From positions 1 through 7,836 of IMG/VR virus record IMGVR_UViG_3300033892_000027: a stretch of 7,836 bases of DNA; one strand, 5' to 3'. Numbering within the stretch: the stretch's first letter is position 1; the number at the start of each line of letters is the position of its first letter. The notes below the pieces were generated by a model. That model saw only the letters and a list, made by a program, of their open reading frames with translations, was not told the origin of the DNA and ran no database searches. The translations under genes and the position numbers were made by a program. Of this stretch, positions 4,296 to 7,836 are shown one piece after another.

Positions 4296-5303
4296 TCATT
4301 CTAAAAATCTAACATATAAATTATTAATGTCATATCTCTTAGCTAATTCTTTTAGATTTCTACTTCTTTCTTCTCTATCTTGAAGTTCACTAGCTATCAA
4401 TATTGCATTTACCATGTCATGAATATCAAATTTATGAATTTTCCATTTTTGACCATGAGTTTTGTCATAATATTCTTCAACTTCTGAAGATTTAATTAGT
4501 AAATTCCATTGCCATGAAGTAAATTCATCAAATGGCGGCATTAATTGATGAATGACCGGCGTTCCCATAGCCATACTTTCTAGAACTGGAAGTCCAAAGC
4601 CCTCAGTTCCTGAAGGAACTATCATATAATCCATAACTTTGTAAAATGCGAAAATGTAATCCCTAGGATTTAGCCCAAATTCGCTAACAAAATGAACATT
4701 TGCTGGAACTTCAAAATTCTTAAAGTCCTTATGAGAAATTACAAAGAAGTGAACTTTTTTGGCTAATTCTGGAATTTTAGTATTTATTTCTTGGAAAACT
4801 CTTATCATAAGATCCATATTCTTTCTTTTAGTTAAACCACTTACAATTCCAAATTTTATGGAATTTGGAAAATCTTTATCTAATTTTTGCTTTAATTGAA
4901 TAGCTAATTGTTCAGCTTTTTCTACAATTTCAAAATTAATGCCATGGAAAACTGGAAGATCAGTTTGTAAACCGACCTCTTGCAAATTTTGAGCTGTAAA
5001 CTTTGAATTTGGTATAAATATTATATTTTCTAATAGATATTGATTTACAATATTTGTATTAGGTATACCATCACAAGTTGTATAAAAGTATTTCTTACCT
5101 TTAAATTCTCTAAATGTATACAAATATGGATTTAATGAAGGAGGGTGAAATGGCATAAAAATTATTAATTTATCACTTTGTGGAATTAAATATGGATTTG
5201 TTGAAATTGTAACAATTTCACCATGATTTCTTAAAATATAAGCTATATCTTCTGAAACATTTCTTATAGATGAGTAATTCATAGTCAGGATTGTCGTTTT
5301 CAT
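4296..5303 (-). CDS. GT-B fold (GT4/group 1) glycosyltransferase, SIRV ORF335 homologue
   Basis: Signature PSGTEGFGLPVLESMAMGTPVI (E-x7-E), plus PNSKFT, HGIN and KRKN motifs. 335 aa, next to the capsid gene as in SIRV1/2. Confidence 0.95.
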   Translation of the reverse strand: MKTTILTMNYSSIRNVSEDIAYILRNHGEIVTISTNPYLIPQSDKLIIFMPFHPPSLNPYLYTFREFKGKKYFYTTCDGIPNTNIVNQYLLENIIFIPNSKFTAQNLQEVGLQTDLPVFHGINFEIVEKAEQLAIQLKQKLDKDFPNSIKFGIVSGLTKRKNMDLMIRVFQEINTKIPELAKKVHFFVISHKDFKNFEVPANVHFVSEFGLNPRDYIFAFYKVMDYMIVPSGTEGFGLPVLESMAMGTPVIHQLMPPFDEFTSWQWNLLIKSSEVEEYYDKTHGQKWKIHKFDIHDMVNAILIASELQDREERSRNLKELAKRYDINNLYVRFLE

Positions 5304-5310
5304 ATTAAGC

Positions 5311-5334
5311 TTTTAAATGTCATGACATTAAAAA
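5311..5334. promoter_or_regulatory. Palindromic bidirectional promoter (TTTTAAATGTCATGACATTAAAAA)
   Basis: Perfect 14-bp palindrome AATGTCATGACATT at 5316-5329 (24 bp with one mismatched pair) in the 36-bp gap between divergent ATGs 5303 and 5340. Each arm reads TATA-like followed by GTC. Confidence 0.7.
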
Positions 5335-5609: not shown

Positions 5610-6014
5610 TTAGCTTACATATCCAGTTGGACTTCCAGTAATAATGTTGGTGACTGCGTCTAATACTGTAGGATTTGCATTAAACGCTGAAATATAATAT
5701 GCCTTCAATCCGTTAATCATATTAACTAGTGCCGGGCCACCGCCGAGTCTATTTAAAGCTCTAGCTACCTTAAGACCGAAACCTTGATAAATCGCTCTAT
5801 TGGGACCAGTTATTCCATATTCCGACAAAACTGAACTAACTTGTTCATTCACAGAAGTGAATTTTGGAACGTTAGTTTGGAAATTTTGTTGTGCAACTGG
5901 AGATACATTACTTAAAATTGTTGAAGCTACGGTAGGATTTGAAAATGATGCAAATTTTGCACTCCACTTAGCATATCTTTGACTATATGATCTTGGTGTT
6001 CTTCCTTTTGCCAT
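5610..6014 (-). CDS. Rudivirus major capsid protein (SIRV2 ORF134/gp26 homologue)
   Basis: 134 aa, near-identical to the remembered SIRV coat protein: RSYSQRYAKW, FSNPTVASTILSNVSPVAQQNFQTNVPKFTSVNE, YGITGPNRAIYQGFGLKVARALNR, ITGSPTGYVS. Confidence 0.98.
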   Translation of the reverse strand: MAKGRTPRSYSQRYAKWSAKFASFSNPTVASTILSNVSPVAQQNFQTNVPKFTSVNEQVSSVLSEYGITGPNRAIYQGFGLKVARALNRLGGGPALVNMINGLKAYYISAFNANPTVLDAVTNIITGSPTGYVS

Positions 6015-6574: not shown

Positions 6575-6630
6575 TTCAGAATTAAAGATAAAGTAAAGTT
6601 TTTTAAATGTCTAATAACAAATATTCATAT

Positions 6631-6765
6631 ATGAGAATTGAAGAAAAAAATGGAGAAAAGTTTTTAGTAATTGAAAGTAAAGAAGATTTAGAAGAATTCA
6701 GAAAAATGTTAATTGAGGCTTATTATGAACTTCATCAAGAACATAAGCCTAAGTCTTCAAAATGA
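6631..6765 (+). CDS. Unannotated 44-aa protein (MRIEEKNGEKFLVIESKEDLEEFRKMLIEAYYELHQEHKPKSSK)
   Basis: Own promoter TTTTAAAT-GTC with GTC 22 nt before the ATG. Beta-hairpin plus helix pattern; codon usage resembles neighbouring genes. Confidence 0.7.
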   Translation: MRIEEKNGEKFLVIESKEDLEEFRKMLIEAYYELHQEHKPKSSK

Positions 6766-6785
6766 CTTGAAATAGAAACTTATAA

Positions 6786-7099
6786 ATTTGTCAGAAAACG
6801 AAAAATAAAAACGAAAAAAAATGGAAAGAGAATTTCGTGAAATAATAGTTTTCTTAATTTTTTTAGCTTTAATGTCTTTAGCTTTAATAGTCATGTCATT
6901 AGGAATTCTTGTAAAAAATATGCCAATAGTTATAATATCAACATTTTTTGCATCTGGAATTTTTGCAATTATATATGTAGTAATTTATGATATCTTTGCA
7001 GATATTTATGATGAAATTGATGAACTTAAACAAGAAATTGAAAGATTAAAAAGAAAGAAATAATCAGAAATATATTTGTCAGAAAATGAAAAATAAAAA
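6786..7099 (+). repeat. 26-bp direct repeat ATTTGTCAGAAAAYGAAAAATAAAAA (6786-6811 and 7074-7099) flanking the 80-aa membrane gene
   Basis: 25/26 identity read directly from the sequence. Confidence 0.75.
6821..7063 (+). CDS. 80-aa membrane protein: two transmembrane helices and a charged C-terminal coiled coil
   Basis: IIVFLIFLALMSLALIVMSLGILV and MPIVIISTFFASGIFAIIYVVIY, then DEIDELKQEIERLKRKK; TTATAAATTT-GTC promoter. Confidence 0.8.
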   Translation: MEREFREIIVFLIFLALMSLALIVMSLGILVKNMPIVIISTFFASGIFAIIYVVIYDIFADIYDEIDELKQEIERLKRKK

Positions 7100-7118
7100 A
7101 AGATATATTAATTTATTT

Positions 7119-7265
7119 TTAACTATCATATGTTGTAGTATTTGGTCTCAAGAATTCCATTAGCGCTTGCCTAATTACTTCAGATCTGTTTAATTTATGA
7201 TTCATAGCATATTTATCAAGTTTTTGCAAAAGATCTTCTTCAACTTTAAACGTTATTACTCTCAT
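7119..7265 (-). CDS. 48-aa CopG-like ribbon-helix-helix protein ([48 protein letters not shown])
   Basis: Textbook RHH pattern (ITFKV strand, LLQKLDKYA helix, [10 protein letters not shown] helix). ATGA overlap with the svtR stop and a GGGGAG Shine-Dalgarno. Missed by the ORF track. Confidence 0.85.
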
Positions 7266-7420
7266 TTAACTCCCCTTTTCTGTAAATATTCTTCTAAAGC
7301 TTCTTCAATTGCCTCTGTTAAAGTTTTATTATTATTTGCACAATATACTTTCAGTTTTCTCTTTAATTCTTTATCTATATTTATACCGAAAACTGTTCTT
7401 TCCTTTTTAACTTTCTCCAT
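7262..7420 (-). CDS. svtR: SvtR-like RHH transcriptional repressor, 52 aa ([52 protein letters not shown])
   Basis: Matches remembered SIRV1 SvtR motifs VFGI-x-x-DK, LKVYCA-x-NN and AIEEA-x-x-EYLQKR. GAGG ribosome-binding site and TATA+GTC promoter at ~7452-7470. Missed by the ORF track. Confidence 0.88.
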
Positions 7421-7521
7421 TGTTTATCCTCATTTTATAAACATACATTATGACATATTTATATATTTCGATTTTTTGCATAAACTTTATTACTAAGTAA
7501 TTTGCATATAATAAAATTGAA

Positions 7522-7809
7522 ATGTCAACAATACAATATGCAGTAGAAGGATTTCTAGTACTGATGGGTGTGCTAATAGGCTCATATGTAGTTGGAGAAA
7601 TTGTACATCTCTACAATCAAAAGCAAGCAAATGAATCGTTCCAAATAGCAGTAGATCAAATGACAAAAAGTACAATTAGTGCAATAGAAAGTATTAAAGA
7701 TACCACTACTCTTGGCGTTAATGCATTATTGAATATGGATACTCTTTCAGATGTAAATGCATTAGCACAGAAAAAGCAAAGTTCTCAGCAACAGTCACAA
7801 AGTAAATAA
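7522..7809 (+). CDS. pvap: PVAP, virus-associated pyramid egress protein (SIRV2 P98 / STIV C92 family)
   Basis: N-terminal transmembrane helix followed by GEIVHLYN-x-KQ, DQM-x-KST and AIESIKDTT-x-x-G-x-NALLNMDTL-x-DVN, the conserved PVAP motifs. T-run at ~7814-7819 after the stop. Confidence 0.95.
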   Translation: MSTIQYAVEGFLVLMGVLIGSYVVGEIVHLYNQKQANESFQIAVDQMTKSTISAIESIKDTTTLGVNALLNMDTLSDVNALAQKKQSSQQQSQSK

Positions 7810-7836
7810 TCTATTTTTTAGATTTAGTCATATAAG

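What the first reader, a model, noticed from the sequence alone, without database searches (positions are those of the whole stretch)
7119..7809. Compact lysis-control module: two coupled RHH regulators head-to-head with the pyramid gene
Seen: svtR and a second RHH gene overlap by ATGA and diverge from pvap across a 101-bp gap that must hold both promoters (svtR TATA ~7456-7465, pvap TATA-like CTTTATTA ~7484-7492). Known: SvtR is an autoregulating repressor that also represses a structural gene, and PVAP alone builds the egress pyramids and is toxic when expressed. As I recall, svtR and P98 are far apart in SIRV2, with P98 distant from the capsid gene. Inference: here they form a switch that times host-cell opening, possibly through an SvtR/RHH2 heterodimer or antagonism. 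Both regulators fall under the 60-aa ORF cutoff and are easily overlooked.
Basis: partly seen in the sequence, partly recalled or inferred. Interest (0 to 1): 0.65.

Follow-up and report, generated by a model that had tools for sequence, protein, structure and literature searches.

The report
Usarudivirus svtR-aCcr1 operon facing pyramid gene
The three genes and their shared 101-bp gap are real and conserved in Yellowstone rod-shaped Sulfolobus viruses, but the second small regulator belongs to a known cell-cycle regulator family and the gap shows only two ordinary promoters set back to back, so a dedicated lysis switch is an untested idea.

Summary
On the minus strand, a 48-aa RHH gene (7119-7265) overlaps a 52-aa svtR homologue (7262-7420) by ATGA. 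A 101-bp gap separates them from the plus-strand pyramid gene pvap (7522-7809). The window is a fragment of a Yellowstone usarudivirus.

The same svtR/pvap/rep arrangement is annotated in SIRV4-11. I found it in 34 of 34 informative IMG/VR relatives, with no indels between the svtR promoter and the pvap ATG.

- **Second RHH.** It is not an unknown partner. It passes the NCBIfam aCcr1 equivalog cutoff and is 96% identical to SIRV9 gp19, a protein placed in and tested with the clade of cell-cycle regulators that act on host promoters (Li et al. 2023). It is missing downstream of svtR in 11 of the 34 relatives.
- **The gap.** It is two inherited core promoters. The svtR side carries the rudivirus-wide TATA+ATGTCATAA element. 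The pvap side matches the P98 promoter of SIRV1/2. Their TATA centres are about 27 bp apart.
- **Operators.** No SvtR consensus, no aCcr1 box and no conserved extra operator were found.
- **Heterodimer.** The complex model gave only weak, non-discriminating support.

SvtR control of pvap by spreading or crowding remains possible but untested.

The parts
   Evidence: ORF. NCBIfam NF053762 aCcr1_fam equivalog, 75.4 bits against cutoff 60. Pfam RHH_1 E 2e-7. 95.8% identical to SIRV9 gp19. 54% identical to SIRV2 gp21 over 35 aa, E 3e-14.
7262..7420 (-). svtR homologue (52 aa RHH repressor)
   Evidence: PF21432 56B_RHH, 55.6 bits against cutoff 27.2. PDB 2KEL E 1.4e-16. About 71% identical to SIRV1/2 ORF56b.
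7262..7265 (-). ATGA overlap: svtR stop TGA overlapping the aCcr1 start ATG
   Evidence: Sequence. The same 4-nt overlap occurs in all 10 usarudivirus genomes.
7270..7275 (-). Shine-Dalgarno-like GGGGAG, 4 nt upstream of the aCcr1 ATG, inside the svtR 3' end
   Evidence: Read directly from the sequence. Its role is inferred.
7428..7431 (-). Shine-Dalgarno-like GAGG, 7 nt upstream of the svtR ATG
   Evidence: CCTC is invariant in the ten-genome alignment. It is also present in SIRV1.
7448..7470 (-). svtR core promoter: BRE CGAAA (7470-7466), TATA TATATAAA (7465-7458), and the rudivirus-specific downstream element ATGTCATAA (7456-7448)
   Evidence: Invariant block and near-invariant in 30 unique relatives. 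Homologous to the SIRV1/2 svtR promoter. The same element sits at many SIRV1/SIRV9 promoters. Kessler 2006 reports that most SIRV promoters carry an extra virus-specific element.
7482..7492 (+). pvap core promoter (AAACTTTATTA; TATA TTTATTA at 7486-7492). The predicted transcription start is about 5-9 nt before the ATG.
   Evidence: TTATTA is invariant in 30 unique relatives. Homologous to the SIRV1/2 P98 upstream sequence GAAAACTATATTA. The start position is inferred from the usual TATA-to-start distance in Sulfolobus.
7522..7809 (+). pvap (P98/C92 homologue, pyramid-forming egress protein, 95 aa)
   Evidence: phrog_8367 E 1e-52. 95% identical to SIRV8/9/10 PVAP, 68% to SIRV2 P98, 56% to STIV1 C92.
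7089..7101 (-). Oligo-U tract (U7 A U5) 18-30 nt after the aCcr1 stop; likely terminator of the svtR-aCcr1 transcript
   Evidence: Sequence. No stable hairpin (z-score 0.78), as expected for archaeal oligo-T terminators. Function is inferred.
7814..7819 (+). T6 tract 5 nt after the pvap stop; likely terminator
   Evidence: Sequence. Function is inferred.

Best explanation
The locus is the standard usarudivirus junction between two independent transcription units.

One unit is a bicistronic svtR-aCcr1 operon on the minus strand, with a short SD-bearing leader, an ATGA-coupled second gene and an oligo-T terminator. The other is a monocistronic, nearly leaderless pvap gene on the plus strand.

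The 101-bp gap is two ancestral core promoters abutted back to back, with TATA centres about 27 bp apart. The svtR promoter belongs to the rudivirus-wide 'TATA + ATGTCATAA' class. The pvap promoter is of a different class and is the same one P98 has in SIRV1/2.

The juxtaposition came from a genome rearrangement relative to the Icelandic rudiviruses. The block from svtR to the gp20/ORF84a homologue is inverted. pvap now sits between svtR and rep (the ORF119c homologue).

Functionally, by homology and not shown here:
- SvtR autoregulates and represses selected viral genes.
- aCcr1 reprogrammes host cell-division and replication promoters.
- PVAP builds the egress pyramids.

The proximity may let SvtR bound at its own promoter spread over, or crowd, the pvap pre-initiation complex. 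The sequences do not demand this.
For: - Gene identities.
- Conservation of order, overlap and gap length in 10 isolate genomes.
- svtR<- ->pvap-><-rep is present in 34 of 34 informative IMG/VR loci. None of the 30 unique sequences has an indel from ATTATGACA to the pvap ATG. The neighbouring divergent MCP/ORF103 gap, by contrast, varies from 173 to 272 bp.
- The gap is more conserved than the flanking genes: mean pairwise identity 85.7% against 77-81% for the three CDSs.
- The svtR promoter is homologous to that of SIRV1/2. Its ATGTCATAA element recurs at many rudiviral promoters, including SIRV2 gp17 and gp20.
- The pvap promoter is homologous to the P98 promoter of SIRV1/2.
- Rearrangement: the gene convergent with pvap in relatives is 74% identical to SIRV2 ORF119c. 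SIRV9 gp11 matches SIRV2 gp20 at E 6e-18 and follows the ORF207 homologue as in SIRV2. Bautista 2017 notes that the non-central core genes are rearranged between Yellowstone and Icelandic SIRVs.
- aCcr1 function: Li 2023.
- SvtR autorepression and spreading from a distal site: review PMC5569661.
- Weak RNA hint: in one hot-spring metatranscriptome, a single contig spans both RHH genes (7150-7403). Other contigs cover pvap (7544-7769), and none covers 7404-7543.
Against: - No transcription starts or ends were measured. The metatranscriptome evidence is from contigs only, comes from roughly 94%-identical relatives, and may include DNA.
- The strict length conservation of the gap, and its higher conservation than the coding flanks, could mean more than two independent promoters. 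A phasing constraint for a bridging regulator or mutually exclusive pre-initiation complexes is possible.
- The direction of the rearrangement (which genus is ancestral) was not determined.
- The SvtR beta-strand differs from SIRV1 (VFGINID against VFGIYMD). A missing SIRV1-type consensus therefore does not exclude a local SvtR site on the pvap side.
Confidence: 0.7

Rival explanations
1. SvtR, alone or together with aCcr1, directly represses the pvap promoter from the shared gap, so that pyramid formation is timed by the regulator level.
For: - The TATA boxes are only about 27 bp apart and the spacing is invariant in 30 variants.
- The gap is more conserved than the coding flanks.
- SvtR is reported to repress by competing with TBP/TFB and to act from a site about 80 nt away, probably by spreading.
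- A related RHH, AvtR, protects about 100 nt between two promoters.
Against: - No match to the SvtR consensus in 7421-7521 at up to 3 mismatches. Window-wide there are 17 hits against 13 expected.
- In the pvap half, what is invariant or nearly so is confined to the TATA and the A-rich stretch just before the ATG. The palindrome's right arm and the TTTGCATA repeats vary.
- The pvap promoter is the same one used in SIRV1/2, where no RHH gene is adjacent.
- Li 2023 reported only unspecific binding of SIRV2 gp21 to the SIRV2 svtR (gp15) promoter.
Confidence: 0.2
2. SvtR and aCcr1 form a heterodimer, or antagonise each other by subunit mixing, and this sets regulator activity.
For: - The genes are translationally coupled by ATGA in 10 of 10 isolate genomes.
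- The complex prediction scored 0.41 against a best control of 0.00. The tool rates this as 'weak support'. The three runs agreed in at least 97% of contacts and the partner pLDDT was about 70.
Against: - By the tool's calibration, a pass at or below 0.60 was reached by only 5 of 78 solved complexes and by all 4 of the 180 mismatched pairs that reached the pass mark, so it is more often wrong than right.
- Any two RHH monomers can be laid as a pseudo-dimer from memory of the fold, and the controls contained no other RHH protein.
- SvtR is a homodimer in 2KEL/the literature, and aCcr1 homologues are modelled as homodimers.
- 11 of 34 relatives have svtR without an adjacent aCcr1.
- In SIRV1/2, aCcr1 is coupled to a different, non-RHH upstream gene.
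Confidence: 0.05
3. The linkage is functional but not transcriptional. aCcr1 shuts down host cdvA and division, while PVAP is reported to engage ESCRT-III/Vps4. The two are kept close as a co-inherited 'division takeover plus egress' cassette.
For: - In STIV1, an unrelated virus family, C92 (PVAP) is followed on the same strand by A61, an aCcr1 homologue.
- In one STIV1 variant the two matches are only about 108 bp apart.
- The review reports a C92-CdvB yeast two-hybrid interaction and CdvC at the pyramids.
- aCcr1 binds the cdvA and escrt-III-2 promoters.
Against: - In STIV2 the slot upstream of the A61 homologue holds an unrelated gene, A103, with no similarity to C92. The STIV1 adjacency may therefore be incidental.
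- In SIRV2, gp21 (12522-12701) and P98 (31671-31967) lie about 19 kb apart.
- 11 of 34 usarudivirus-like contigs lack aCcr1 within the fetched flank of up to 3 kb around pvap.
Confidence: 0.1

Closest known systems
SIRV1 SvtR (gp08, ORF56b; PDB 2KEL) and its regulon
   Same: The 52-aa protein is about 71% identical to it, with the same RHH fold family (PF21432). Its promoter (TATA + ATGTCATAA, then AAAATGAGG before the ATG) is homologous to that of SIRV1/2 svtR.
   Different: In SIRV1/2, svtR follows rep (ORF119c) on the same strand and is followed by ORF399. Here it faces pvap and is followed by aCcr1. Beta-strand residues differ (INID against IYMD), and the region between the promoter and the SD is not conserved. 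The published targets (its own gp08 promoter, gp30 with the highest affinity, and further sites that the review does not name) are not known to me to include P98.
aCcr1 / SIRV2 gp21 / SiL_0190 clade of RHH cell-cycle regulators (Li et al. 2023, NAR)
   Same: The 48-aa protein passes the NCBIfam aCcr1 equivalog model. It is 96% identical to SIRV9 gp19, which that study listed and expressed as the usarudiviral member. As in SIRV1/2, the gene overlaps its upstream gene by 4 nt.
   Different: The upstream partner is svtR rather than ORF84a. The protein is shorter (48 aa against 59 aa). No exact AGTATTA box lies in its own upstream region or in the gap.
PVAP (SIRV2 P98 / STIV1 C92)
   Same: A full-length homologue (phrog_8367, 68% identical to P98) with a homologous core promoter.
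   Different: The genomic position differs. It lies 1.5 kb from the capsid gene, between svtR and rep, rather than near the right genome end 17 kb from the capsid gene as in SIRV2.
AFV6 AvtR gp29/gp30 intergenic control region
   Same: An autoregulating viral RHH protein controls a neighbouring gene by covering about 100 nt between two promoters.
   Different: For AvtR, binding and regulation were shown by footprinting and in vitro transcription. Here nothing beyond core-promoter elements is conserved and no binding data exist.

Membership tests
SvtR / 56B-like RHH (PF21432) | Sequence match to the family model above the curated cutoff | tested here: met
   55.6 bits against cutoff 27.2, E 4.8e-15. 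PDB 2KEL E 1.4e-16.
SvtR / 56B-like RHH (PF21432) | Binds and represses its own promoter (autoregulation) | not testable with these tools
   Only promoter homology with SIRV1/2 svtR could be shown.
SvtR / 56B-like RHH (PF21432) | Published SvtR consensus site ATnnTTCAAnAnnnnnAAAATG near a regulated promoter | tested here: inconclusive
   No hit in 7421-7521 at up to 3 mismatches. However, the consensus as quoted in the review also fails to pick out the gp08 and gp30 regions cleanly in SIRV1 itself (best 3-4 mismatches). The original paper was not held.
aCcr1 family cell-cycle regulator (NF053762) | Equivalog model score above the curated cutoff | tested here: met
   75.4 bits against cutoff 60, E 2.3e-21. 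SvtR scores only 20.9 bits on the same model.
aCcr1 family cell-cycle regulator (NF053762) | Overexpression arrests division; binds AGTATTA in cdvA and other promoters | not testable with these tools
   Literature only. Li 2023 report lower transformation efficiency, small colonies and growth retardation for every construct except SIL_RS14755, which includes the 96%-identical SIRV9 gp19. Cell-enlargement data are described only for other members. Binding was shown for SIRV2 gp21 and SiL_0190.
PVAP (P98/C92) | Full-length homology to the pyramid protein, including the N-terminal hydrophobic segment | tested here: met
   phrog_8367 covers residues 1-94 of 95, E 1e-52. Identity is 68% to P98 and 56% to C92. 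The hydrophobic N-terminus is visible in the translation.
Shared-operator divergent switch (regulator gene head-to-head with its target) | A conserved operator, distinct from the core-promoter elements, in the gap or over the target promoter | tested here: not met
   In 30 unique relatives, the invariant or nearly invariant positions fall mainly in the two TATA/BRE regions, the ATGTCATAA element and the A-rich stretch before the pvap ATG. A short GAnT motif between the two BREs is the exception. The palindrome ATTACTAAGTAAT and the TTTGCATA repeats vary.
Shared-operator divergent switch (regulator gene head-to-head with its target) | Regulator binding changes target promoter activity | not testable with these tools
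   Needs EMSA, footprinting or in vitro transcription.

The most novel reading that the evidence does not exclude
In usarudiviruses a rearrangement fused the pyramid-gene promoter to the autoregulated svtR promoter at a fixed 27-bp TATA-to-TATA distance. SvtR occupancy or spreading, or competition between the two pre-initiation complexes, would then gate PVAP synthesis. Co-transcription of aCcr1 would tie host division arrest to the same control point. This would be a lineage-specific rewiring of lysis timing by promoter juxtaposition.
Probability: 0.15. Interest if true: 0.6.

Novelty: new member of a known kind. Interest (0 to 1): 0.3.

Why it matters
How archaeal viruses time the opening of egress pyramids is unknown, and no regulator of P98/C92 expression has been described in the papers I could read. 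If SvtR did gate pvap in usarudiviruses, this would be the first lysis-timing circuit for an archaeal virus. It would be easy to test because SIRV8/9 and their host are culturable.

As it stands, the locus is a new metagenomic copy of an arrangement already present in published, annotated genomes, built from three known gene families.

The useful corrections are:
- The second RHH is aCcr1, a host cell-cycle regulator.
- The gap consists of two inherited promoters.
- The svtR-pvap-rep core, not the two-RHH pair, is the invariant unit.

Tried and rejected
- **SvtR consensus scan.** I scanned for the consensus quoted in the review. Nothing fell in the gap, and window-wide hits were at chance: 17 against 13 expected. 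The consensus is also hard to recover in SIRV1 itself. The original Guilliere 2009 paper was not held, so the real footprints could not be compared.
- **aCcr1 box AGTATTA.** There are two exact hits in the window, both inside coding sequence, at chance level. One 1-mismatch hit lies over the pvap TATA (7488-7494, minus strand), but 1-mismatch hits occur about 10 per kb. The SIRV2 gp17 and gp20 promoter regions that I scanned (about 135-170 bp upstream of each start), which gp21 binds, also lack the box at up to 1 mismatch.
- **Repeats in the gap.** I found a TTTGCATA x2 direct repeat, a 10-nt inverted repeat and the palindrome ATTACTAAGTAAT. I rejected them as operators because they are not conserved across relatives, apart from the parts that coincide with the TATA and start regions.
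- **Heterodimer prediction.** Score 0.41 against a best control of 0.00; partner pLDDT about 70; runs agree in at least 97% of contacts. The tool's verdict is weak support. I do not count it as evidence, because the RHH fold is an obligate dimer, no RHH control was included, and passes at or below 0.60 are more often wrong than right by the tool's own calibration.
- **Public reads.** Only contigs were available. Two metatranscriptomes hold parts of relatives. They cannot show starts, strands or levels.
- **Rfam.** No RNA family matched in the window.
- **Hairpin terminator after aCcr1.** No stable hairpin was found, z-score 0.78. Only oligo-T tracts are present.
- **STIV2 A103 against C92.** No similarity.
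- **Not run.** I did not use the large protein searches, because family scans and the literature settled the identities.

Full report
**What the window is.** The 7,836-bp window is an IMG/VR virus record estimated at 25% complete. Its DNA matches Yellowstone Sulfolobus islandicus rod-shaped viruses of the genus Usarudivirus. Over 6600-7836 it is 92-93% identical to SIRV8/9 and 76-86% identical to SIRV4-7, 10, 11 and isolates V3/V60/V65. It carries the rudiviral major capsid protein (5610-6014, Pfam Sulf_coat_C, E 1e-75), a GT4 glycosyltransferase and other rudiviral PHROGs.

**Checking the observation.**
- All stated coordinates hold. The 48-aa ORF lies at 7119-7265(-), the 52-aa ORF at 7262-7420(-) and the 95-aa ORF at 7522-7809(+). 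The first two overlap by ATGA, and the gap is 101 bp.
- The 52-aa protein is an SvtR homologue: PF21432 at 55.6 bits against a cutoff of 27.2, and PDB 2KEL at E 1.4e-16.
- The 95-aa protein is PVAP: phrog_8367 at E 1e-52, and 68% identical to SIRV2 P98.
- The 48-aa protein is an RHH protein (Pfam RHH_1).
There svtR (ORF56b) lies at 8818-8988, the capsid gene at 14058-14462 and P98 at 31671-31967.

**The second RHH is a known regulator family.**
- It scores 75.4 bits on NCBIfam NF053762, 'aCcr1 family cell cycle regulator' (equivalog, cutoff 60). SvtR scores only 20.9 bits on that model.
- It is 95.8% identical to SIRV9 gp19 and 54% identical to SIRV2 gp21.
- Li et al. 2023 (PMC9976892) defined this clade. 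SIRV2 gp21 and the host protein SiL_0190 bind AGTATTA in the promoters of cdvA, escrt-III-2 and replication genes. Their overexpression blocks division and enlarges cells.
- That study explicitly included SIRV9 gp19 and STIV A61 among the viral members expressed. All constructs except SIL_RS14755 lowered transformation efficiency and slowed growth.
- gp21 bound the viral gp17 and gp20-gp21 promoters specifically. It bound the SIRV2 gp15 (svtR) promoter only unspecifically.
- Both small genes are annotated in the RefSeq records of SIRV4-11, so they are not generally overlooked.

**Conservation and synteny.**
- In all ten usarudivirus genomes examined, the order aCcr1<-svtR<- ->pvap is kept, with the 4-nt overlap and a 98- or 101-bp gap.
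- A scan of IMG/VR with PVAP returned 35 loci, 71-96% identical at the protein level. In all 34 with enough sequence, svtR faces pvap, and pvap is convergent with a rep (ORF119c) homologue.
- In 11 of those 34, svtR has no RHH ORF downstream, and no aCcr1 match lies within the fetched flank of up to 3 kb. The invariant unit is therefore svtR/pvap/rep, not the RHH pair.
- Relative to SIRV1/2, the block from svtR to the gp20/ORF84a homologue is inverted, and pvap sits between svtR and rep. The rep homologue is 74% identical to ORF119c. SIRV9 gp11 matches SIRV2 gp20 and follows the ORF207 homologue as in SIRV2.
- Bautista et al. 2017 already noted that the non-central core genes are syntenic among Yellowstone SIRVs but rearranged compared with the Icelandic ones.

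**Anatomy of the gap.**
- The gap is better conserved than the genes around it: 85.7% mean pairwise identity against 77-81% for the three CDSs.
- Conservation is strongest over a block read on the minus strand as BRE CGAAA, TATA TATATAAA and ATGTCATAA (7470-7448).
- This block is homologous to the svtR promoter of SIRV1/2, where it lies inside the 3' end of rep.
- The 'TATAAA(A/T)ATGTCATAA' module recurs at many other rudiviral promoters. Examples are SIRV2 gp17 and gp20, about ten SIRV1 and SIRV9 genes, and at least six genes in this window. [quoted passage not shown]
- An invariant GAGG (7431-7428) lies 7 nt before the svtR ATG. A GGGGAG (7275-7270) lies 4 nt before the aCcr1 ATG.
- On the pvap side, TTATTA (7487-7492) is invariant. 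The segment AAACTTTATTACTAAGT aligns with GAAAACTATATTATTTAGT upstream of P98 in SIRV1/2. It lacks the TGTC element, so the two promoters belong to different classes.
- No SD precedes pvap. With the TATA about 30 nt upstream of the ATG, the mRNA is probably nearly leaderless (inference).
- The two TATA centres are about 27 bp apart. None of 30 unique related sequences has an indel from ATTATGACA to the pvap ATG. The neighbouring divergent MCP/ORF103 gap, by contrast, varies from 173 to 272 bp.
- Oligo-T tracts follow both units, at 7101-7089 on the minus strand and 7814-7819 on the plus strand.

**Search for operators.**
- The SvtR consensus quoted in the review has no match in the gap at up to 3 mismatches. 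This is weak negative evidence. The consensus is poorly recoverable even in SIRV1. The SvtR beta-strand here differs from that of SIRV1. The primary paper was not available.
- No exact aCcr1 box lies in the gap.
- The TTTGCATA direct repeat and the palindrome ATTACTAAGTAAT found in this window are not conserved in relatives.
- The conserved positions are thus mostly accounted for by the two core promoters, the SD and the region just before the pvap ATG, leaving only a short GAnT motif between the two BREs.

**RNA evidence.** Only assembled contigs were available.
- In one hot-spring metatranscriptome, a single 254-nt contig (about 94% identical) spans 7150-7403, covering both RHH genes.
- Several contigs cover pvap (7544-7769), and none covers 7404-7543.
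- This fits a bicistronic svtR-aCcr1 RNA and a separate pvap RNA. It cannot prove either, because DNA carry-over is possible and contigs give no ends or strand.

**Heterodimer idea.** A complex prediction of SvtR with aCcr1 scored 0.41 against 0.00 for the best control. The partner pLDDT was about 70 and the runs agreed in at least 97% of contacts. The tool rates this as weak support and more often wrong than right. Two RHH monomers can always be modelled as an RHH dimer, and no RHH control was used, so I give it no weight. The absence of aCcr1 next to svtR in a third of relatives also argues against an obligate pair.

**Conclusion.**
- The most economical reading is two independent units whose ancestral promoters were brought back to back by rearrangement. 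SvtR and aCcr1 would keep their known roles of viral autoregulation and host cell-cycle control.
- Direct control of pvap by SvtR, through spreading from its own promoter or through crowding of the adjacent pre-initiation complex, is mechanistically plausible given the 27-bp spacing and its rigidity. It has no positive sequence support, and I put it at about 0.2.
- A looser functional link between aCcr1 and PVAP is suggested by the C92-A61 adjacency in STIV1 and by the reported ties of both proteins to the Cdv/ESCRT system. It is weakened by STIV2, by SIRV1/2 and by the aCcr1-less relatives.

Noticed in passing
window 7067-7090 (+), compared with L010:1784-1830 and L009:1784-1941: A TATA+TGTC promoter-like element (GAAATATATTTGTCAGAAAATG) sits right after the ORF80 stop. 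It is homologous to the dUTPase (dut) promoter of SIRV6. SIRV4 keeps a dut 5' fragment, while this window, SIRV9 and SIRV10 have no dut. The orphan promoter points antisense into aCcr1-svtR, and a T5 tract (7116-7120) could stop it early. Metagenome contigs show dut-bearing variants branching at 7081.
   Followed up: partly
window 6786-6807 and 7074-7095: A 22-nt near-identical direct repeat (ATTTGTCAGAAAA[C/T]GAAAAATA) flanks ORF80 (6821-7063). The first copy is ORF80's own promoter and leader region, and the second is the orphan dut promoter.
   Followed up: partly
window 5303-5328: The divergent glycosyltransferase gene (ATG at 5303, minus strand) and the C2H2 zinc-finger gene (ATG at 5322, plus strand) are only 18 bp apart. 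They share a perfect palindrome ATGTCATGACAT (5317-5328) that presents the rudiviral TGTC element in both directions.
   Followed up: no
window upstream of 2242(-) and 2734(-): ORF71 and ORF121 have nearly identical promoters, GCGAAAGATTTATATATTT(C/A)GA. This is a duplicated promoter class without the TGTC element.
   Followed up: no
L015:3023-3026 (SIRV2), L016:9114-9117 (SIRV1), window 7262-7265: aCcr1 keeps a 4-nt start/stop overlap with its upstream gene in both rudivirus genera, although the upstream gene differs (ORF84a against svtR). How a rearrangement breakpoint preserved or recreated this coupling is unexplained.
   Followed up: partly
L004:1389-2118 (STIV1) and L053:1381-2146 (STIV2): In STIV1 the pyramid gene C92 is followed on the same strand by A61, an aCcr1 homologue. 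In STIV2 the same slot upstream of the A61 homologue holds A103, which has no similarity to C92.
   Followed up: partly
L017:7279-7551 (SIRV9 gp15; beyond the window's right end): A third RHH-like gene lies two genes beyond pvap in relatives. It encodes 90 aa, hits Pfam RHH_3 at 21.5 bits (just under the cutoff of 21.6), and is the counterpart of SIRV4 gp10, the name-giving member of one of the viral RHH clusters in Li 2023. The pvap neighbourhood therefore holds up to three RHH genes.
   Followed up: no
L023, L026, L033, L036, L047 and others: Eleven IMG/VR relatives have a monocistronic svtR with no aCcr1 within the fetched flank of up to 3 kb. Where, or whether, these viruses carry aCcr1 is unknown.
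   Followed up: partly
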